A stretch of DNA of 49,223 bases, taken from contig NC_068989.1 in assembly GCF_001194135.2 (NCBI RefSeq), forward strand, positions 79,555,875 through 79,605,097, read 5' to 3'. Source of the stretch: Octopus bimaculoides (lineage: Eukaryota). Below the pieces are notes generated by a model that was not told the origin of the DNA, made no database searches, and was given only the letters and a program-made list of their open reading frames with translations. A program made the position numbers and the translations under genes. How positions within the stretch are numbered: position 1 is the first letter of the stretch; the number at the start of each line of letters is the position of its first letter. Below, in pieces: positions 2,590 to 48,202 of this stretch.

Positions 2590-3004
2590 GTGCGTGTGTG
2601 CGTGTGCGTGTGTGTGCGTGAGTGTGTGTGTGTATTTGTGTGTGTGTGTATATATGTAGCTATGTATATATGTGTACATGTATACATAAAAATAACACAC
2701 ACATACATATATACATGCATACACACATATACACACGCATATATATATTTATATATATATGCAAGAATGATATAACACGCAGATGGAAGATATGAGGACT
2801 TAATTATAGTCACACAATTTCTTTATCTGCACAGCACCACCTGATGAAGCGCCCACCCACGGCTGTTGCTGAAAAATATTCTACAATGTACTAATTATAA
2901 GCAATAATCTTGAATAATAATATATGAATATAAATTCAGCAACTAAAAGCTGGTGAGCGGTGCAGAAACAAATGTTATGATCTAATATTGAAGCCTGAGA
3001 AGGC

Positions 3005-10330: not shown

Positions 10331-11059
10331 GATACACTCATCACCAGGCACTACCCACCATCACTAATTGATATATGCTTTCAACCTGCCCTACAACTCA
10401 ACATCCATGAACTCAAGCATCCCCAATTAAAGAACGATTTACAACGAAAAGCCCTACCATACATCTCCACATACAACCCTCTTAACAATGAAGCCTTCCA
10501 CACCATCCTCCAGAACATTCCCCTACTAAAAAAGTTCCACAGAATGAATTTAATCCTCCAAACGCTCACCATCATAAAGAGCAAAAGACAACCCAAATCT
10601 ATGAAAAGTTTCCTAACACAAGTCCAAGTACGCTCTACAACAACACTGAAGCCGTCAGTAAAAAAATGCGGAAGACCTAACTGTGGGGTATGCGTCAACC
10701 TAATTGAGGGATCGGAGTTCTCTTTCAAACAGGGTCAACATTTCACAGTGAAAAGCAACTTTACATGTGCTTCGGAGAACCTAAAATATGTATTATCTTC
10801 TGAGTGTCGAGAGCAATACATAGTTCTACATAGATCCCAGATCAAAATTCAGGGATACAGAAGAATAACATTCAGCGAACACATCGACATTTGCGCCACC
10901 AACAAACAACCCAGCTTCAGAATGTTTCCCCTCTATAAATTCAGGGACGATGTAACGTGTAGTCAGCGCATTAAGACAGAAGCATATTTTAACACAAAAT
11001 ATAAACCCCTTTTGAATGCTTCCACCACAAATGAAACTATTACAAGAGCATTAGAATAA
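10331..11059 (+). mobile_element. Penelope-like element fragment (RT linker and GIY-YIG endonuclease)
   Basis: Frame open from 10331 to 11059: LPYISTYNP...IIKSKRQPK...CGRPNCGVC...FTCASENLKYV...CREQYI...HRSQI...HIDIC...FPLYK...KYKPLLN. This is the typical Penelope C-terminal layout with a CxxxxCxxC zinc knuckle; the GIY-YIG motif is damaged. Confidence 0.85.
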
Positions 11060-13084: not shown

Positions 13085-14900
13085 TTGTGGAATGAGGGAG
13101 TTTGTTACTGCTGCCCTCGTTTGAGTTTCTTGCCGTGATGTAGGATCATCTGGGATCTTGGACAGTAGAACGTCAAAGTGCCTCCTGAGAACATCTCCCA
13201 CTCCATGTTGATTTTCCAGGTCTTTGGAAAGATATTAATTAATAGCTGTTGGCATTTAAATTCTAAGCTGTTGCAGAATCTGGACCTTAATCTAAATGTT
13301 ATGGATGGGAATTTTGGAATAGTGCAGTGGTGTTCCTTTTGGAGCCTGATATAACTCCTGATGTCAAAGTCTAGTATTAGTTGATCTCGGATGTTTGGTA
13401 TGTGTATCACGAAGATTAATAATTCTTTCAAGCTCTTCCAGCAACTCAACTGTTTCTTTGCCGCTAACTTCTTGTAGTAACACCGATGAACTGCCTCCAT
13501 TTCTGCTAATAAATTAACACTGTAGGTTAACAATAGCAGAGAGCTGTGGAGAAATATTCTTCCTGGTCCCTTGTTCTGAATGTTATCAGAATCCCTTTTG
13601 GTGAGATGTACATAAAGAGACACATCGTTGCTCATATCAATCCTCAGTTCACGCACTGACATTGTCTTTGGGATTTCCAATTCCTTTTATCCAAAGTATC
13701 TTTGTTGCGGCATATTAGCACAAACTGACTGATTGCGGAGAGCTTTAGGTTTTCCTTTTTAATTTTCGTGTTGACTTCTTCAGACCGTTTATACGGCATC
13801 TAGTTCTTTCTAAAGAAAATTAGTACCGAGGTCATTTTTGAGTACATGCGTTATTTTTAACTGTCAATATAGCTGGTTTCAGTATCTTCCTGCATAAATG
13901 ATAACAAGTTTGAGAAAGAGAGAGAGAGAGAGGTAGAGACAGACAGGGACCACAAACAGCAGCAGCCCTAAGGTAGTTTTCTGAGATCTCCACTTGCTAT
14001 TAATATCTCCTTAGAGAGGGTTCCATTTGCTGCCACAGCCTGGCTTCTGTCTTTTAAGAAGTCATGAAACCACCTGCCAAGTTTATCAGCTATGCGGAGT
14101 CACTATACCTTGTGTCATATCATACCATGATCAACTTCATTAAATGCCTTTCTAAAATCGAGATACGTTTGAGCGATTCATAAGTTGTTTCAGTACCTAG
14201 TCATAATACTGCAGAAGCTGTCTAAGGCAGCGTCTACCTGAGCGGAAGCCACGCTGGGTGTCAGGGAGCAGATGATGATCTTCATCTTTCTCCTGATAAA
14301 GCCTTCCATGACATTTCTGACAAGTGAGGCTAGAGAAACAGGTCTATAATTTTTATCACCTGCTCTGCTTCCTCCTTTATGTAAACAAGACATTACACCC
14401 TCCGTTAACTTTCTAGGAAATCTATGACTTGTAAGGAAGCTTTGAGAGAAGATCTGCAGTGATCTTGTTTAGACTCCTTTGTAGTTTTTTTGGAGAATTG
14501 CTGGGAATCCATTAGGGCCTGTGGCTGAGTCTGAGCTCATTTTATCAATGGCAAATATAACATCAATTTCTTCTATTTCGATGCAATCGACAATGGCTGT
14601 TCTTTCTTGTAGAGCTCCGGTATCAAAGAAATTGTCCGACATATTTATTTGTAACTGTTCCAACGGAGTGGTGAAAACAATTTTATATTGCATATTCAAT
14701 ATATCATTTGTCCTTTGGGGGTTCGAAGTCAGTGAGCCATTTTCTTCGAATAGTGGCCCAATCTTGTACCGTACTGAAAAAGATAGTCTTACAAATCTAT
14801 AAAAGACTTCAGTTTGTCTTTACACTTTTTACAGTTGTGGCTTATCTTTCTATCGTTTCCTTTTTCATGGGAGCGTTTGAGTTCCATTTTAGCCTCAAGT
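13085..14900 (-). mobile_element. CR1/L2-like LINE, 5'-truncated and decayed (RT and C-terminus)
   Basis: Frameshifted motifs in the correct order: IGPLFEENGSL, AIDKMSSDSATGPNGFP, KGGSRAGDKNYRPVSL, YLDFRKAFNEVDH, WFHDFLKDRSQ, an eroded RDLG-like motif (RELRIDMSNDVS), LLAEMEAVHR. Confidence 0.88.
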
Positions 14901-19463: not shown

Positions 19464-19506
<43 letters not shown>

Positions 19507-19956
19507 AATATATGTGTGCAAAAATTGTCACCTATGTGTCATACTCACTATAAATGCCTCGTTGAAAGCAAATTGCTGCGGTAATTGTCACGAGATAACA
19601 TCTTTTGAACTTGTAATGTTTAAAACAATATATATCGCAGGGACACTATGGTAGCCGCAGCCGTGGTTAACGAGAAAACTAGATGCATTTCAGCCTATTT
19701 GAGCCTCATCAATGCCGTGTAGTTATAATGATACATGTGGCTGCTTTTCCACGATTATGATACAGAGATTTTTATATTGCTTCTATTGCATTTAACGGAA
19801 TGTATAATAAATATACTTATGTTTATGTATAATTGTGGGTGATTGTGCCTTTATCTGTGTCTGTTTTGTTTGATATATGCGAGTCTATATACATACATGT
19901 ATTGATATAAATACAGAAGCAAACATAGTTACACATAAAAACACAAGAACACTAAC

Positions 19957-20245
19957 CTTCCTCTGTGGACCTTATATATGGTAAAGGCTCCATAGATGAG
20001 TGGGTTTAGCATGCAGTTGGAAGTCCCGAGAGTGAAGAAGTATATGACAGTGCGACTGTTGTCCCATCGGAAGAATGCAAAACCTAAGAAGATGATGTAA
20101 TATGGCGTCCAACAAAGAATGAAAGCTGCGACAATCACTGCACTCATACGTGATGATTTCTTCCTGGCCCTTTCAAAAAGATGTGTACGAATTTGTCCAT
20201 GGTTCACACTATAGCACGACATCGATGTGGGTGAAATTGGAGTAT
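19957..20245 (-). CDS. GnRHR: GnRH/corazonin-type receptor, internal exon: ICL3, TM6, ECL3, TM7
   Basis: Acceptor ctttcccttttgcag|AT at 20246/20245 completes the phase-1 codon G|AT (Asp) from the previous exon. Donor GGA AG|gttagt at 19957/19956. 289 nt: DTPISPTSMSCYSVNHGQIRTHLFERARKKSSRMSAVIVAAFILCWTPYYIIFLGFAFFRWDNSRTVIYFFTLGTSNCMLNPLIYGAFTIYKVHRG(R/S). Motifs CWTPYY (TM6) and NPLIY (TM7). Confidence 0.95.
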
Positions 20246-22039
20246 CTGCAAAAGGGAAAGGTAATAAATATAATTAAAAGTACATTCAGAACGGGATTGA
20301 TTGAAATTTTTGTGATTAATTTGCGTGTAATAAAATTGAGGTAATGCAATGCCCAATTGCTACATTAATTTCAGTATTGGGTCGCATTCTCAGGTGTCAC
20401 ACAGTGTTAACCTATTAAACAATTCATCAGTAGTTCTGAAGGAGGCCATCCGATATTTTCTTATCAACACGTCATTCAATAAAGTAATAATCATGAAATA
20501 CCCATTTAATTGAATAGACTTACTTTGTTTAGGGCTATTACACTTATATCATCCATTCTATTGAATTAGAATTTGAAACAATGTAGCTCGTATTTAAGTG
20601 AAATCAGAGACTATGTTTAAGGATATATCGCTGTTGCATATAACACTTCGAATATCCATTCTATTAAATTAGAATTAATGCATGTATTTCCAATTTAAGT
20701 AGCAATAACATTTACAACTTTGACTATTTCGCTGCTTATATTACGCCTTGGAGCATTTGTGTAGAGATTTTCTTCGTGAAGAAACAGAAGATAGCAAACA
20801 ATGAAATTACTGTTTGGAAGAAAGACCTGCAATATATAACATAGATTTTGTCAAATTACTGTAGTGAAGTTCAGTTGGAAAACGAGTGATGTCAACGGTA
20901 TTTACAGGAACTCTCTGAATCGTGTCTCTTATGAGGGTGAGTTACAATTTTTCTGAGGAGCGGACTGGCTTCAGAAAAAAAAAAAAAAAAAAAAATAACT
21001 AGAAGACAACATGACGCTGTGACATATTAGAAACTCGAATAACCGTTACACGATTGACAGCGTGGAGTTGATTAATAAAATAAGGGGCTACTTATAGTCT
21101 AAATTCAGTAGGGATACTGATATTAACAAATCCCTACATACACAACATATACACGTGTGTGTGTATTCGTGTATGTGTGTTTGTGTTGTGTATCTGTTTG
21201 TGCGTGAGTGAGCGTGTGTGTGTTTGTATATGTATATATATAGATTTGTTTATAAATTCATGCAAGCAGGAAAGCATGCTGGTAAAACGCTGCTCCTCTA
21301 AATGAAAGCCTTACCGGTCATTGTGCTTTAGTGGCACAAAGCAAAGGAGGCTTTGACGTCCACCCGAGAAAACACATAGTAAATGATCCACAAGAACTCT
21401 AGAAAACTGAGTCCCCAAATTATTCCCTTTGCCAAATGGTTTGTAGGGCACCAGCAGGCCTCAAGATACACAAATATGTCCATAGAACATAATTACCGCT
21501 TTATTTTACTTAACCCTCATTTGTGGCTCACGACGAGAGAATCAGTCATACACACTTACATACATATATAGATACATATACACATACATACATATATACA
21601 CATACATACATACATACATACATACATACATACATACATACATACAAACATACATATATATATATATATGTATATATANNNNNNNNNNNNNNNNNNNNNN
21701 NNNNNNNNNNNNNNNNNNNNNNNNNNNNNNNNNNNNNNNNNNNNNNNNNNNNNNNNNNNNNNNNNNNNNNNATCTATATATTAATATTGTTTATTTAAAG
21801 CCCGCAATGGATGCATATGTTAGTTCGTTATGGTTTGCGCCTGAAGAAAATGTTAGAATTTTCTCAACATGTAAAATTATTAGTAACGTTTTAATACACG
21901 TATTATCACCTTTAAATAAATAATATTTATCTCTCACCAGTACATTACATATACATACATATACACATTATGCATACATACATACATACATACATATATA
22001 CATACATGCATACATACGTTTATATGTATGTATATATTG

Positions 22040-22091: not shown

Positions 22092-22243
22092 GTCTATTAC
22101 ACATTCTATCTCCTATTGTATTAATACTGTTACCCCAACCGCCACTACGTAGTTCCTGCAATAAATAACGGATAACAACAAGTAATCGAAACTGTGCCGG
22201 TCCTTTACTCATCACCCATTTATACATTTTGTACAATTTCTCC

Positions 22244-22281
<38 letters not shown>

Positions 22282-22307
22282 AAGATAAGCAACAAAAATT
22301 CAATAGG

Positions 22308-22402
22308 TTATAGCAGTACGTACGTTTCGTACAAGCTCCATTTATTCATGTAGTGAGAACACCACAGAATGTACAATGAAAATGTACTCCTCAGCTGCAT
22401 AA
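22308..22402 (-). ncRNA. Type I hammerhead ribozyme (minimal, Penelope-type) with an expanded loop II
   Basis: Minus strand reads ttatgcag-CTGAGGA-GTAC-[51 nt]-GTAC-GAAAC-GTAC-GTA-ctgc(t)ataa. Stem I is 8 bp with one bulge; core CUGANGA at 22394-22388; G10.1-C11.1 stem II; GAAAC at 22328-22324; palindromic stem III ACGTACGT; GUA cleavage triplet at 22319-22317. Confidence 0.75.
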
Positions 22403-25092
22403 TGGAATTTCATTCTGTAGTGTTCTCACTACATGAATAAATGGAGCTTGTNNNNNNNNNNNNNNNNNNNNNNNNNNNNNNNNNNNNNNNNNNNNNNNNN
22501 NNNNNNNNNNNNNNNNNNNNNNNNNNNNNNNNNNNNNNNNNNNNNNNNNNNNNNNNNNNNNNNNNNNNNNNNNNNNNNNNNNNNNNNNNNNNNNNNNNNN
22601 NNNNNNNNNNNNNNNNNNNNNNNNNNNNNNNNNNNNNNNNNNNNNNNNNNNNNNNNNNNNNNNNNNNNNNNNNNNNNNNNNNNNNNNNNNNNNNNNNNNN
22701 NNNNNNNNNNNNNNNNNNNNNNNNNNNNNNNNNNNNNNNNNNNNNNNNNNNNNNNNNNNNNNNNNNNNNNNNNNNNNNNNNNNNNNNNNNNNNNNNNNNN
22801 NNNNNNNNNNNNNNNNNNNNNNNNNNNNNNNNNNNNNNNNNNNNNNNNNNNNNNNNNNNNNNNNNNNNNNNNNNNNNNNNNNNNNNNNNNNNNNNNNNNN
22901 NNNNNNNNNNNNNNNNNNNNNNNNNNNNNNNNNNNNNNNNNNNNNNNNNNNNNNNNNNNNNNNNNNNNNNNNNNNNNNNNNNNNNNNNNNNNNNNNNNNN
23001 NNNNNNNNNNNNNNNNNNNNNNNNNNNNNNNNNNNNNNNNNNNNNNNNNNNNNNNNNNNNNNNNNNNNNNNNNNNNNNNNNNNNNNNNNNNNNNNNNNNN
23101 NNNNNNNNNNNNNNNNNNNNNNNNNNNNNNNNNNNNNNNNNNNNNNNTATATATATATATATATATATATATGTACGACGGGCATACATACATACATTAA
23201 CATTCAATTGTCACTAATACTGACTGAGGGGGCAGCGTGGCATCTACATTGCTAGAAAAAAGAGTCAAAGACCCTCATAGCCACAAAATGCACATGCTAC
23301 GTGCTGACAGGGGAAATAACCGCGCCACACCAAGTGAGATCACTATGTGAGGCTTACATTCAGAACTTGAAGTTTGTGTGTCAGCATTTTGATGAGCGTT
23401 GCACTTCGTCAGCTAATGCAAGCAATGCAAGACCGGAATGCATAGCATCAGCGATTAAAAAAAATAATGAATAAATAAACACAAAGGTACCTCTTTTGTG
23501 TTTTCAACTCTAACGTGGAAACTTAAGGGAAAGGGGGTTTCACATTTATGTCTAAACATTACTACATTTCATATTCTATTTACAAATATCTCACTGAGAG
23601 TAATAACTCAGAAGCGACTGTGAAAAGTAATAGCTAATATATTTAATGTAACGTGTATCAAAAATCTAATTATAAATTCTTACGCGGTCAGGAAAAGACG
23701 ATATCTCCTAAAATACTAATATTAAGTTAATTACTTCCACAAATACAAGACAACCCCGACTATGTTTTGGTATTATTTAATCTCTTCAACGAAGTGTAGC
23801 CATCGTCGTATTTGCGGAAAGAATCATGCAATAATTAACAATTTATTGTGCAAAAACTTTACACGAGTTAGTACAAAAAATTAGTAAATATAATTTTTTA
23901 AATGGCAGAAGTTAATTATTTAGAGATGCAATCTACACGAAAACCAGCAAAATTAAACACTGCACAAATTCAGCTGCTGCCTAAATTAAAAATGACTTGA
24001 TATATGAATGACAGTATATTCATTGTTATGAAAGATCGCCGACCAAAACATTGGTGTCTCGCCTTCTGTCAACAGCTACCACCATGTTGCGTTCATGATT
24101 AATAAACATAAATTTCAGGAGAATTACTCTAAGAGAGCACCACTAACTGAATAATCCATTACTTTAGGGCATGGCAATGCTGCAAATTAATCAGAAATTT
24201 GTTGTCTTGCAACGTTCAGGTTTCTCAAAGTTAAACTATCTACAGTAACTAAATTGAATCCAAAGACTTTATTGTTTCTCATCTGCTTAGAGTTACAGAA
24301 AGCAGAAATAATTATTTTGTATCATTGTGACAAGTATAAATGTATTTGAAAAACAACAAACATCTGGTTTGGCTGTCTGATGCCATTTAATTTTACCACC
24401 GTATGTCTCGAGGTCAAGAAATCCTGAAAAAGAATGTTTTTCATTGCTATATACATATATGATAAAATATTTTCAGTTAATAGAATAATAAAAAAAAAGC
24501 CAGTTGACTTGATCATACATACTTCTTTTCAAATGTTGGTTTTTATGCTGAGTCATAAATCTATCTTTCTGTGATAAGCTGCGCTACATCGGAAAAGTAT
24601 GTTTTTTTCATGCGTCTAATCCAACACTAAAATTTGTGGTCAATATCATTTCATTCGTGTCCTACGTGGCTTCAGCACATGAAATTCCTTATATTTCCCT
24701 GTGGTCTATAAAACTATCCACCGGCTTACGCCTAACATTGGTTACTATAGGTATTTATTACACTTGTGAACAATAAAAAAAAAATTGAAAAAGAGCTCAC
24801 AATAGTGAAGCAAACATTGATTGATTTAGCTTTCGCCAGATAATAGTATCAACGATTTTTTTCATTTCTACAACAGACAAAAAGAAAAAAATGCGGAACA
24901 TTACTCTATGGAGCAATATATTTTTGGAATACAAAGTCAAACGGATAAGTATTTGGAAAACGACAAAGCTCATTGAATGGCAGCATGTTTGAAAGAACAG
25001 TCTTCGACACGTTTCAGAATTATGGCATCCTTTTTTTGGTGGGGTGGGTAGAATTAGTATCAAGGAAAATTATGAGGGCATAAAATTGTGTG

Positions 25093-30500: not shown

Positions 30501-31757
30501 TAATGGTGGGCTGAAAAATTCAAAGGCCAACTTTGAAGGAATGATGCTAGAGCTGCGACATTTTTCACGCATTAATTGCAACACTTATGAATAACTAATG
30601 CGATTTTGAGATAAACTGACGTCTGACCGTTCAAAGAACACTTCAAAAGTAACCAGTAGCTACTCCTCTTGAAAATGGACAGAATTTCGCATCATGTTGT
30701 TATTAAGTAGCTGCAGAAAAAGGGTTAACCCTCAAGGACATCCATCTTGACATGCTTGCTACATCAAGGGATGACGCTCCAGTTTTATCAACAGTGTAAA
30801 AAGAGCTACTGAATTCAAGAGGGGAAGGGAGAATCTTGAAGTTGACCCAGGATCCAGGCATTCTACAACTGCCACCACCGAGGAAAATATTCAGCATGTT
30901 TACGTCATGCTGATGGATGACAGATGACATGCGATTGACTATAAATTTGAATGGCCAATGCGGTTAGCATTTCCCCTAAGGGAGTTGACAATATTCTGCT
31001 CGATGAAATCGGCCTGACAAAGGTTTCCGCTCGGTGAGTTCCACATCTTCTGATACCTACTGAGAAGTGCACCAGGCTGATCACATCACGGGATAATCTG
31101 ACACTGTTTGGAGTCGGATCCAGCTGGTTTCGTTGAACGTTTCCTAACCGAGGTTGAGTGTTGGCTTCATCACTTTGAGTCAGATACAAAGCTACAATCC
31201 ATGCAGTGGAAGCATTGCACCTCATCTGCTCCAAAGAAATCCAAGGTCATTTAATTTGCAGGGAAGTTGGTAGCCTCAGATGTTTTAGGATGCAAAAGAC
31301 ATTGCATTTATTGACAATCTTCAAAAGGGCCACATCATTAATGGAGAGTATTATGTCAACTTGCTGAGGCAGTTACGAAAAGCTATCAAGACAAAAGGTA
31401 GGGGTCTTGTTTTATCAGGACAATGCTCCAGCACACAAGTCCTTGGTTTCATTGGTTCCTATGCATGGTTGTAACTTTGAACTGGATGATCATCCTTCTT
31501 ATTATCCTGATTTTTTCCATCTGAATGTCATTTTTGACGAAAATCACTTGGTTAGGAAGCGGTATCGTAAAGATAATGACGTCATATTTACTGTTGGTGA
31601 CTGTTTTGTCCAACGGAATGAAAGCTTCGTCACCAGCGGGGTACAAGCAGTGGAACACCGATGGAAGAAGTGTCTGGACCGCAAGGGAGACTATGCTGAA
31701 AAATACACCTCTATGAGAATATCTTGGTCCACCTATGAATTTTTCAGTCGACTCTCG
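30501..31757 (+). mobile_element. Near full-length mariner (DD34D-type) transposon with pseudogenised transposase
   Basis: 1257 bp between TA dinucleotides with degenerate TIRs (ctgaaaaattca). ATG at 30675; fragments KVSAR*VPHLL, FLTEVECWLHHFE, FYQDNAPAHKS, HPSYYPD, HRWKKCLDRKGDYAEK; multiple stops and frameshifts. Confidence 0.92.
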
Positions 31758-31789
31758 TATATCTATCTGTATAACTATCTATATATCTA

Positions 31790-31831
<42 letters not shown>

Positions 31832-33347
31832 GATCTATCTATCTATCTGGCTAGCTAGCTAGCTATATATCTATCTGTCTGTCAAGAATATTTTTATCGT
31901 TATAATTTTTTGTAGAAATTGCTAGAAATATGAAAAAAATAATTTTGACAGTAGTATCGACGTATGTATAGTTATAAATATTAGCTCGCACAGCCATCGA
32001 CATTTTGCTATTGAAGGGAGTTTTTAACTCAGTATTCTATATGCTTTTCTTTATAACGTTATCTACTTCGAGGTCCACTGTTAAAACGATTTATTACATA
32101 GATACATACTTACTTATATACACATGTTTGTGTGATTAGGTTGTAGATATATTCATATGTATGTATTATATACATTATACATCATTATATATATGGATAT
32201 ATATGTGTCTGTATATACATAAATACATATATGTCTGTACTTAAATAAATAAACACACACCCAAACACATATATAACATAATTATAGAACAACTTCAGCA
32301 ATGGTTAAACATATAAAAATATATAAAAATGGTATGAGATATTGAAATCTTTGGCTAATGGTGAGCAAATATAAATTATGAATATGGCTGTAGAAAGAAC
32401 CGGGATTTTTATTCTATTTTGTCTGTTTCTTCACATTTCATCAATAACAAGTTCTACCTCTATACATTTATGTAAACAGAGCATACACGTAGACATGAGT
32501 GCATGCATAATAACATAGGCATTACAGCAAGTCATGATCATCCGGAAGGTACAAAGGAAGTGTGAACTGTAGACGAACGCTAATATACTGCTGTGCAGCG
32601 GACGTCGAGACATTATTTAATGCTAAATAGAAGAGAAAATATCTATGGCAGATGTGACAGCTGAAAGATAACTTAAGATGTGTACGTATCTGTGATTACG
32701 TAACTAAGTCTGTGTGCACCAATCGTAATTTCCTCGCTTTCATAATATCAGAAACAACGCAGCTAATGAGAAAATTAAAATTGAAAACCATGGAAAGAAC
32801 TGTAAAAAAATTGTAAAACTTTCCAGAAGTTTAGTCTCTGCGATGTACATAAGCATAAGAATAAATTTGGAAACGTATGTGTGAATATTTATAACGTTGT
32901 GTCAAAATTATTGATCACAGACATACAGTGACATACAAGTATATATGCACGCACACATATGTGTATAGGTGCAAACATACAAACACACACACATACATAC
33001 ATACATACATACATACATACATACATACAAACATAGAAATATAATTACATACATACACGCATATGTATTGGACGCCATTTTTATTGATGCCAGAATCTAT
33101 AACATTGGCATAGGAAACTATTCATCATTTTGTATAATGAATATTATCATCTAAGTGTTTGCGATTAATACAAAAACAAAACTGGTTGTCGTCATTGGAT
33201 AAATGCAAAGAAGCACCTATTTAAATAGCCTAAACTTAAACTGTTATCAGACATTTGTATTGCTACGATATAAGCCATAGCAAGGCAGAAACCAGGGGTT
33301 ATCTAACGCATGACCTGTAACGTTTTTAATTGACGTTGTTGTTGTTA

Positions 33348-36201: not shown

Positions 36202-36403
36202 CGTGAAACTGTCTCGATGTTTTAATAATAGTCTTTAAAATGAGCAGGTAGGATGTAACCATTATTATGAGCGGGATTACAAACAGCAGAATCATTGACG
36301 ATGCCGAATAGAGTTGCTTTTGCCAAAGTGCATTATAACTATCACGGCATTGGTGAAACATTCCTTGTCTGAACATTTTTCGCTGTTCTTGGAAAATAAC
36401 AGC
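36202..36403 (-). CDS. GnRHR: GnRH/corazonin-type receptor (class A GPCR), internal exon: end of TM4, ECL2, TM5, start of ICL3
   Basis: Acceptor ttttaatccag|GCT at 36404/36403 and donor CAC G|gtaagt at 36202/36201. 202 nt = 67 codons + 1 nt: AVIFQEQRKMFRQGMFHQCRDSYNALWQKQLYSASSMILLFVIPLIIMVTSYLLILKTIIKTSRQFH. Contains the ECL2 Cys and the TM5 F-x-x-P motif; recognised from memory as octopus GnRHR. Confidence 0.93.
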
Positions 36404-47724: not shown

Positions 47725-48202
47725 AAAAACATGTGTGTGTAGCTGTGAGGAGAAATCGTCGAATCACCATCCGTGAGTTATCAGAGGATGTGCAGATTAG
47801 TTACGGCTCAGTTCAATCCATTATCACTGAAGATTTGGTCAGGAGACGCGTGTCTGCCAAGTTTGTGTCAAAACTGCAAAGAGAAACTCGGGTTTCAGTT
47901 GCACAAGACCTCCTTTATTGTGTCGAGAACAATGAACACCTTTTGAAAATTTTGCATAGGCCTCTGAGCAGGTATCGCCAAGCTTTTGACAAAATTTGAT
48001 GCAGCTTATCTGCTCAACTTCCTCTACCATGGTAAATGCGACGGCCACACACTACACACCTTCCTTCCAAGCTCTGCTAGAATGCTAAAACTTAATGCAC
48101 CGGCACAGCAAAGTTCAAGGTCAATCTGGCAAGCTGCTTTACTCTGAGTTCAATAGCTTCGTTACTTCAGCAACCGTCCGGGTACTTATTGATCAGACCA
48201 CG
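47725..48202. mobile_element. Rearranged mariner fragment: 5' end on the minus strand, middle part inverted
   Basis: Minus strand: TA plus TIR cgtggtctgatcaataagtacccggac at 48202 and N-terminus EQISCIKFCQKLGDTCSEAYAK. Plus strand: VRRNRRITIRELSEDVQISYGSVQSIITEDL..RRVSAKFVSKL. Confidence 0.85.

What the first reader, a model, noticed from the sequence alone, without database searches (positions are those of the whole stretch)
22308..22402. Catalytically intact hammerhead ribozyme on the sense strand of a GnRH-receptor intron
Seen: every invariant hammerhead residue is present on the minus strand (CUGAgGA, G10.1-C11.1, GAAAC, GUA), with stem I ttatgcag/ctgc(t)ataa and a self-complementary stem III (ACGUACGU). 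Known: Penelope-like elements carry such minimal, dimer-forming hammerheads, and intronic hammerheads occur in some animal genes. Inference: the GnRHR pre-mRNA could self-cleave between 22317 and 22316, which could affect splicing or output of a reproductive-axis receptor. Activity may be low, because stem III is short and no tertiary contacts are obvious.
Basis: partly seen in the sequence, partly recalled or inferred. Interest (0 to 1): 0.75.

Follow-up and report, generated by a model that had tools for sequence, protein, structure and literature searches.

The report
Relic hammerhead ribozyme locked in hairpin
The intron of this GnRH-receptor-like gene does carry a complete hammerhead ribozyme motif on the sense strand, but it looks like a stray, damaged copy of the ordinary animal retroelement-type hammerhead, and a 41-bp hairpin overlapping it should stop it from folding, so it is unlikely to cut the receptor's pre-mRNA.

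Summary
Minus strand 22402-22308 carries every invariant hammerhead residue, helices I, II and III, and a cleavage site between 22317 and 22316.

It is the only descriptor match in the window. Only 2 of 3000 random windows gave any match. It aligns end to end with Rfam Hammerhead_1, but scores 18.9 bits against a threshold of 34.

The score is low because helix II encloses 49-51 nt where the consensus has about 6. The other arm lies just upstream and abuts the N gap.

With the upstream arm included, the hairpin fold is about 39 kcal/mol more stable than the ribozyme fold. The predicted probability of helices I and II is then zero.

Deleting 42 nt (22370-22329, flanked by TTGTAC repeats) would restore a textbook 53-nt type I hammerhead.

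The host gene reading holds: it is a minus-strand GnRHR-family GPCR, and the motif lies 2.06 kb upstream of the 3' splice site.

No second copy, tandem partner or orthologue could be retrieved.

Verdict: a solitary, probably retroelement-derived and probably inactive member of a known family. Regulation of GnRHR is not supported.

The parts
22308..22402 (-). Whole type I hammerhead motif (stem I open). The Rfam Hammerhead_1 alignment covers 22310-22400.
22395..22402 (-). Stem I 5' strand, UUAUGCAG
22388..22394 (-). Catalytic box CUGAGGA (C3-A9, N7=G)
22383..22387 (-). Helix II 5' strand GUACA (G10.1 at 22387)
22334..22382 (-). 49-nt segment enclosed by helix II, where the family consensus has about 6 nt. 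It contains the proximal UGUAC (22375-22371) that could close a short helix II, and most of inverted-repeat arm B.
22329..22333 (-). Helix II 3' strand UGUAC (C11.1 at 22329)
22318..22328 (-). G12 A13 A14 followed by palindromic helix III ACGUACGU (A15.1 at 22325, U16.1 at 22318)
22316..22317 (-). Predicted scissile bond: 3' of A17 (22317), 5' of C1.1 (22316)
   Evidence: coordinate check; standard hammerhead numbering
22308..22316 (-). Stem I 3' strand CUGC-u-AUAA (one bulged U)
22331..22371 (.). Inverted-repeat arm B, lying inside the hammerhead's helix II segment
22411..22451 (.). Inverted-repeat arm A. It is upstream of the hammerhead in the transcript, ends at the assembly gap, and has 1 mismatch in 41 with arm B.
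22329..22370 (-). 42 nt whose removal restores a canonical 53-nt hammerhead. TTGTAC is present at both junctions. Putative inverted-duplication insertion (inference).
22246..22307 (-). About 30-nt tail (22307-22279) followed by (TA)n (22246-22278) directly 3' of the motif
22452..23147 (.). Assembly gap (696 N) that hides whatever lies 5' of arm A. (TA)n resumes at 23148.
36202..36403 (-). Context: upstream GPCR exon (TM5 region). Acceptor ...AATCCAG|GCT, donor CAC G|GTAAGT (phase 1).
19950..20245 (-). Context: downstream GPCR exon (TM6-TM7, CWxP, NPxxY). Acceptor TTTTGCAG|AT (phase 1). The 3' limit is not determined.

Best explanation
This is a solitary copy of the canonical metazoan type I hammerhead, the Rfam Hammerhead_1 kind carried by Penelope-like element repeats and non-LTR retrozymes. 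It was left in the intron by an old retroelement-type insertion next to a (TA)n microsatellite.

Its helix II now encloses a 42-49-nt segment that is an inverted duplicate of the sequence just upstream. In the sense transcript the two arms are made in the order arm A, ribozyme 5' half, arm B. They should therefore snap into a 41-bp hairpin before the GAAA box, helix III and the stem I 3' strand are even transcribed. That places the two halves of the ribozyme at opposite ends of a long helix.

The motif is therefore most likely a catalytically silent fossil with no role in GnRHR expression.

Shown: the motif, the inverted repeat, the energetics and the intron context. Inferred: the retroelement origin, the insertion scenario and the inactivity.
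For: Homology rather than chance:
- It is the only descriptor hit in the window. Random windows gave 2 hits in 3000, and none at the observed helix strengths.
- The Rfam alignment matches the consensus outside the invariant core as well (GAGU-C...G-ACGAAACG--CGU), and the helix I, II and III lengths are near-consensus (one extra bulged U in stem I).
- The same ACGUACGU helix III occurs in independent canonical type I hammerheads recovered from metagenome contigs (L003, L004).

Ordinary in this setting:
- 235 Hammerhead_1 loci are reported in the giant squid genome (PMC6962438).
- Penelope-like elements are a major repeat order in Octopus vulgaris (PMC13282606).
- About 43-44% of Xenopus retrozyme copies are intronic (bioRxiv 10.64898/2026.07.22.740005).

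Retroelement-like setting:
- PLEs carry their hammerheads near the 3' end, often have an adjacent inverted 5'-truncated copy and a 30-40-bp tail, and Naiad-clade PLEs (which themselves lack canonical hammerheads) favour (TA)n targets (PMC8557442).
- Here the motif is followed by about 30 nt and then (TA)n. Only 5% of the window lies that close to such a run.

Disabling structure:
- The inverted repeat is 41 nt and 98% complementary.
- The hairpin MFE is -75.8 kcal/mol, against -36.6 for the best fold with helices I and II forced. The pairing probability of helices I and II is 0.000 in the 152- and 252-nt contexts.
- Even in isolation, helix II (long form) has only 8.5% probability.
- Removing 42 nt flanked by TTGTAC gives a 53-nt canonical hammerhead. 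Its energy gap to the MFE (4.0 kcal/mol) is like that of a reference canonical hammerhead (5.0).
Against: - No other copy of the 22291-22451 sequence exists in the window.
- None could be found in the protein-indexed public assemblies. Membership of a repeat family and a retroelement origin are therefore not demonstrated.
- No RT/EN ORF adjoins the motif.
- The score is below Rfam's gathering threshold.
- Thermodynamic prediction ignores proteins, helicases, and A-to-I editing of the hairpin, and it ignores hammerhead tertiary contacts.
- Arm A abuts an assembly gap, so its reality and true length rest on one draft contig.
Confidence: 0.7

Rival explanations
1. Active intronic ribozyme. The hammerhead folds in some fraction of GnRHR pre-mRNAs and cuts the intron 2 kb before the 3' splice site, lowering or gating receptor output.
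For: - The full catalytic core and all three helices are present.
- It is on the sense strand of the intron.
- In isolation the ribozyme fold is only 2.5 kcal/mol above the MFE.
- Helix III of 2 bp plus a tetraloop is the invertebrate type reported as efficient (PMC7229834).
- Conserved intronic hammerheads are known in vertebrates (from my own knowledge of the HH9/HH10 literature; not tested here).
Against: - There is a 39 kcal/mol penalty against the 41-bp hairpin, and transcription order favours the hairpin.
- The 49-nt insert replaces loop 2, which normally makes the rate-enhancing contact with stem I.
- There is no second copy for dimer formation.
- The score is sub-threshold.
- No conservation data exist.
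- Retrozyme copies are reported as depleted from introns relative to intergenic DNA, which suggests that active sense copies are selected against.
Confidence: 0.07
2. Chance match. The core boxes and GTAC-based palindromes assembled by accident in AT-rich, repeat-rich intron DNA. The 5' half lies in the loop of an unrelated palindromic element (for example a MITE-like hairpin), and the 3' half lies outside it.
For: - The score is 18.9 bits, below gathering. E is about 8 when scaled to a whole-window, all-family search.
- Helices II and III both derive from the self-complementary tetranucleotide GTAC, which makes pairing cheaper than a Markov null assumes.
- The ribozyme's two halves sit on either side of an inverted-repeat arm.
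Against: - Only 2 of 3000 random windows gave any match, and none at the observed strength.
- Six further non-core positions agree with the Hammerhead_1 consensus, and the helix lengths closely follow it.
- Deleting exactly 42 nt regenerates a textbook ribozyme, which is not expected of a chance match.
Confidence: 0.08
3. Assembly artefact. Arm A (22411-22451) at the contig end is a fold-back or chimeric extension. The true locus then has a hammerhead with a long helix II but no competing hairpin.
For: - Arm A ends exactly at a 696-N gap.
- Unlike most gaps in this window, this one is not bordered on that side by a microsatellite.
- The draft has 13 gaps in 49 kb.
Against: - The arms differ at one position (C/T). 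Arm A is therefore supported by its own reads or k-mers and is not a copy of arm B (inference).
- The hammerhead itself lies 51 nt inside the contig.
- Even without arm A, the long-helix-II fold is a minority conformer (8.5%).
Confidence: 0.1

Closest known systems
Rfam RF00163 Hammerhead_1: canonical metazoan type I hammerheads of satellite DNA, Sm-alpha and non-LTR retrozymes
   Same: - Open helix I.
- Core boxes CUGANGA and GAAA, and a UH cleavage site.
- Helix II starts G-U and ends A-C.
- Helix III is a short palindrome of 2 bp capped by a tetraloop, the form PMC7229834 describes for invertebrates.
- Full-length alignment to the model.
   Different: - 49-51 nt in place of a loop 2 of about 6 nt.
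- Score of 18.9 bits, below the threshold of 34.
- No tandem repeat of 170-400 nt and no second copy in view.
- No recognisable loop 1 / loop 2 contact.
Minimal hammerheads in the pseudo-LTRs of Penelope-like elements (Cervera & de la Pena 2014, PMC4209133)
   Same: [quoted passage not shown]
- Palindromic helix III, as in the fly, rotifer and shrimp PLE variants.
- Position near a 3' end beside a microsatellite, with an inverted repeat next to it, as described for PLE insertions in general (PMC8557442).
   Different: - No RT / GIY-YIG ORF adjoins it.
- The only ORF with a PLE-like endonuclease motif in the window is about 11 kb away on the other strand (10544-11059).
- Typical min-HHRs lack helix III and have a 7-8-bp helix II with a 5' bulged base, which this motif lacks.
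Conserved intronic hammerheads of vertebrates (Rfam HH9 RF02275 and HH10 RF02277)
   Same: Sense-strand location inside an intron of a protein-coding gene.
   Different: - Those are defined by deep conservation and stable monomeric folds.
- Here conservation is untested and the fold is out-competed.
- In the clan, only Hammerhead_1 was reported as the best match.

Membership tests
Hammerhead ribozyme, type I (Rfam Hammerhead_1) | Invariant core: C3 U4 G5 A6 N7 G8 A9, G12 A13 A14, A15.1-U16.1, H17, G10.1-C11.1 | tested here: met
Hammerhead ribozyme, type I (Rfam Hammerhead_1) | Three helices around the core, with helix I open-ended | tested here: met
   Helix I is 4+4 bp with one bulge, helix II is 5 bp, and helix III is 2-3 bp and palindromic. 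Helix II encloses 49 nt.
Hammerhead ribozyme, type I (Rfam Hammerhead_1) | Score at or above the curated gathering threshold (34 bits) | tested here: not met
   18.9 bits; no hit at gathering
Hammerhead ribozyme, type I (Rfam Hammerhead_1) | The ribozyme fold is attainable in its native transcript context | tested here: not met
   Hairpin -75.8 against forced hammerhead fold -36.6 kcal/mol; pair probabilities 0. This is a prediction only.
Hammerhead ribozyme, type I (Rfam Hammerhead_1) | Site-specific Mg2+-dependent self-cleavage | not testable with these tools
   Needs in vitro transcription or end-mapping.
Hammerhead ribozyme, type I (Rfam Hammerhead_1) | Covariation or conservation across copies or orthologues | tested here: inconclusive
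   No related sequence could be retrieved. The only relative found covers just the exon region, at 80% identity.
Non-LTR retrozyme | Tandem repeats of about 170-400 bp, each with a type I hammerhead | tested here: not met
   One motif only in 49 kb and no direct repeat of the unit. The adjacent 696-N gap leaves a small loophole.
Penelope-like element pseudo-LTR hammerhead | Hammerhead inside direct repeats flanking an RT / GIY-YIG ORF | tested here: not met
   No such ORF lies next to the motif. The distant ORF 10544-11059(+) has a CX4CXXC plus GIY-YIG-like motif by eye but no Pfam hit, and no hammerhead follows it.
Penelope-like element pseudo-LTR hammerhead | Insertion architecture: 3'-end hammerhead, 30-40-bp tail, microsatellite target, adjacent inverted truncated copy | tested here: inconclusive
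   A tail of about 30 nt plus (TA)n and an inverted repeat are present. The gap hides whether the repeat continues as an inverted element copy.
Conserved intronic hammerheads (HH9/HH10) | Orthologous conservation in the same intron across species | not testable with these tools
   No cephalopod genome collection is available by DNA. The protein-indexed look-ups failed.

The most novel reading that the evidence does not exclude
The hairpin and the ribozyme form a switch. The 41-bp duplex normally silences an otherwise competent sense-strand hammerhead. Unwinding of the duplex, or heavy A-to-I editing of it (cephalopods edit RNA extensively; this is my own knowledge, not tested here), would release the ribozyme to cut the GnRHR pre-mRNA. 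That would give conditional control of a reproductive-axis receptor.
Probability: 0.03. Interest if true: 0.8.

Novelty: new member of a known kind. Interest (0 to 1): 0.25.

Why it matters
If the motif were active, it would be an invertebrate example of a self-cleaving RNA inside a hormone-receptor pre-mRNA, a possible new layer of control.

As it stands, it is mainly a clean example of how a retroelement-type hammerhead can be neutralised in a sense intron by an inverted duplication. It also shows that a core-motif match alone overstates function, because the flanking 150 nt decide whether the ribozyme can fold.

It also flags a long perfect intronic dsRNA hairpin that may be of interest for RNA-editing or small-RNA studies.

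Tried and rejected
- Rfam at gathering on the whole window found nothing. The permissive whole-window scan was swamped by microsatellite-driven miRNA look-alikes and gave no further hammerhead candidates among the 150 matches listed.
- The sub-threshold miRNA-family hits on 22329-22453 (MIR1509, MIR1878 and others, both strands) only reflect the long hairpin. I rejected them as family assignments.
- Self-BLAST of 22150-22451 against the window showed only the inverted self-match and (TA)n noise.
- Exact-protein look-ups of the two ORFs nearest the motif were not on record.
- A six-frame peptide concatenate of the motif flanks, searched against 5.8 billion proteins, gave no hit at E<=1.
- The exon peptide search returned one Logan cluster. 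Its contigs (1.3 kb, 80% identical) stop 1.5 kb short of the motif, so no orthologous intron was reached.
- A pattern scan of viral contigs found nothing.
- No tRNA-like SINE head was found.
- A first shuffle simulation timed out and was rewritten.
- I could not decide between two origins of the inverted repeat: a microhomology-mediated inverted duplication into helix II, or two head-to-head 5'-truncated copies of an element whose helix II is natively long. The TTGTAC junction repeat (about 1% by chance within 49 nt, my estimate) favours the first. The gap hides the deciding bases.

Full report
**Observation**

Read on the minus strand, 22402-22308 is UUAUGCAG-CUGAGGA-GUACA-[49 nt]-UGUAC-GAAA-CGUACGU-A-CUGCuAUAA. 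Every invariant hammerhead position is present:
- C3-A9 at 22394-22388.
- G10.1/C11.1 at 22387/22329.
- G12-A14 at 22328-22326.
- A15.1-U16.1 at 22325/22318.
- A17 at 22317.

Stem I is 4+4 bp with one bulged U. Helix II is 5 bp. Helix III is the palindrome ACGUACGU.

**Is it more than chance?**

- Rfam finds nothing in the window at gathering thresholds.
- A permissive scan aligns Hammerhead_1 (RF00163) over its whole model to 22400-22310. The score is 18.9 bits against a threshold of 34, with E=0.02 for 117 nt against all 4227 families.
- The aligned bases agree with the consensus beyond the invariant core: aUccagCUGAcGAGUCC[6]GGACGAAACGcgCGUCcugg.Au against AUGCAGCUGAGGAGUAC[51]GUACGAAACGUACGUACUGCuAU.
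- The score loss comes mostly from a 51-nt insert where the consensus has 6. That attribution is my inference.
- A structural descriptor of my own hits this site and nothing else on either strand.
- In 3000 random windows with the same dinucleotide transition frequencies it hit twice, and never at the observed helix strengths.
- Because helices II and III are both built from the self-complementary GTAC, the real null is somewhat more permissive than that. The extra consensus agreement still makes homology to the Hammerhead_1 family much more likely than accident.
- Two independent canonical type I hammerheads pulled from metagenome contigs share the same GAAACGUACGU helix III (L003, L004).

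Positions 22331-22371 and 22411-22451 are a 41-nt inverted repeat, 98% complementary, 39 nt apart.
- Arm B is the bulk of the 49 nt enclosed by helix II.
- Arm A lies immediately upstream in the transcript and ends at the 696-N gap.
- The 39-nt spacer holds the stem I 5' strand, the CUGAGGA box and the 5' strand of helix II.
- The GAAA box, helix III, the cleavage site and the stem I 3' strand lie beyond arm B.

**Folding**

| Context | MFE (kcal/mol) | Best fold with helices I and II forced | Pair probabilities |
|---|---|---|---|
| Isolated 95 nt | -24.8 | -22.3 | long helix II 8.5%, stem I 33% |
| 152 nt, with arm A | -75.8 (the hairpin) | -36.6 | helices I and II 0.000 |
| 252 nt, with arm A | -106.5 | not computed | helices I and II 0.000 |

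Transcription order also favours the hairpin (inference). Arm A, then the ribozyme's 5' half, then arm B emerge before the 3' half exists. A 41-bp helix also places the two halves of the ribozyme about 11 nm apart (my estimate from A-form geometry).

Secondary-structure energies do under-rate hammerheads. A reference canonical motif (L004) is 5 kcal/mol above its own MFE. A 39 kcal/mol gap is of a different order.

**A damaged canonical ribozyme?**

UGUAC occurs twice, at 22375-22371 and at 22333-22329. Deleting the 42 nt between them (22370-22329, with TTGTAC at both junctions) gives UUAUGCAGCUGAGGAGUACAUUUUCAUUGUACGAAACGUACGUACUGCUAUAA. That is a 53-nt type I hammerhead with a 5-bp helix II and a 7-nt loop. 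Its energy gap to the MFE is 4.0 kcal/mol, like the reference motif.

The deleted segment is the reverse complement of the upstream flank. I therefore favour an inverted duplication into helix II through TTGTAC microhomology (inference).

The alternative is two head-to-head 5'-truncated copies of an element whose helix II is natively long. This architecture is described for Penelope-like elements (PMC8557442). It cannot be excluded, because the gap hides the bases beyond arm A.

The single C/T difference between the arms argues that both arms are real sequence, not a fold-back assembly artefact (inference).

**Genomic context**

- Two minus-strand exons flank the site.
- One exon is about 36403-36202 (TM5), with acceptor AATCCAG| and donor CAC G|GTAAGT.
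- The other starts at 20245 (TM6-TM7 with CWxP and NPxxY), with acceptor TTTTGCAG|AT.
- Both junctions are phase 1, giving ...SRQFH-DTPISP....
- Both exons hit Pfam 7tm_1.
- The joined peptide's best solved-structure matches are GnRH receptors (E=5.5e-16 and 5e-13), ahead of all other GPCRs.
- The motif is therefore on the sense strand of an intron of about 16 kb in a GnRHR-family gene, 2.06 kb upstream of the 3' splice site.
- I could not separate GnRHR proper from its invertebrate sister receptors, and I could not verify the species.
- Directly 3' of the motif come about 30 nt and then (TA)n at 22246-22278. Only 5% of the window lies that close to such a run.

**Comparison with what is known**

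- Canonical metazoan type I hammerheads have a helix I of about 6 bp, a helix II of about 4 bp and a very short helix III capped by a palindromic loop (PMC4209133).
- In invertebrates the 2-bp-plus-tetraloop helix III version self-cleaves efficiently, while amphibian versions need dimers (PMC7229834).
- PLEs carry hammerheads near their 3' ends and often sit beside an inverted truncated copy with a 30-40-bp tail. Naiad-clade PLEs, which lack canonical hammerheads, favour (TA)n targets (PMC8557442).
- PLEs are a major repeat order in Octopus vulgaris (PMC13282606).
- 235 Hammerhead_1 loci were reported in the giant squid (PMC6962438).
- In Xenopus about 43-44% of retrozyme copies are intronic, though depleted relative to intergenic DNA (bioRxiv 10.64898/2026.07.22.740005).
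- An intronic copy of this family in a cephalopod is thus expected background.

**What could not be done**

- No cephalopod genome can be searched by DNA with these tools.
- Exact look-ups of the ORFs next to the motif failed.
- A six-frame peptide query of its flanks found nothing.
- The only relative retrieved (Logan contigs L001 and L002, 80% identical) covers just the downstream exon.
- Copy number, family membership, orthologous conservation and activity all remain untested.

**Verdict**

It is a new, degenerate, solitary member of a well-known ribozyme family, most likely retroelement-derived. The functional inference, self-cleavage of GnRHR pre-mRNA, is unlikely because an overlapping 41-bp hairpin should prevent folding. 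Interest is low to moderate. The residual novel possibility is a hairpin-gated ribozyme, to which I give about 3%.

Noticed in passing
window 22331-22451: A 41-bp, 98% complementary hairpin with a 39-nt loop lies in a sense intron. It gives sub-threshold hits to several plant and animal miRNA-precursor models on both strands, which only reflect its shape. Such a perfect duplex would be a candidate ADAR or Dicer substrate.
   Followed up: partly
window 10544-11059 (+): A 171-aa ORF carries a C-x4-C-x2-C motif followed by FTCASENLKYVL...QYIV. By eye this resembles the zinc-finger linker plus GIY-YIG endonuclease of Penelope-like elements. It has no Pfam hit and no hammerhead downstream. It is followed by a (CTT)n tract, a gap and (AT)n.
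   Followed up: partly
window 14469-14699 (-) and 13105-13680 (-): ORF fragments containing ...SATGPNGFPAILQK..., reminiscent of the N-terminal part of LINE reverse transcriptases. No Pfam hit at E<=0.01.
   Followed up: partly
window 31407-31862 (+) and 47733-47999 (+): Mariner/Tc1-like transposase remnants by eye (FYQDNAPAHKS; an HTH-like N-terminus with weak HTH_24 and HTH_58 hits). They appear to lie within or near the same gene's introns.
   Followed up: partly
window, 13 N-gaps: Nine of the 13 gaps are bordered by (TA)n or (CA)n-type dinucleotide runs on at least one side. The left edge of the gap at 22452 is the inverted-repeat arm instead, which suggests the palindrome itself broke the assembly there.
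   Followed up: partly
L001 and L002 (Logan SRR11869384 and SRR11869391): Contigs from another, unidentified relative are about 80% identical to window 19487-20823 across the last GPCR exon and its flanking intron. The exon peptide is 99% identical.
   Followed up: partly
window 2841-2874 (+): CTGATGA...GAAA with a 4-bp helix II was found by the relaxed scan, but without stem I or helix III. I judge it a chance partial core.
   Followed up: yes
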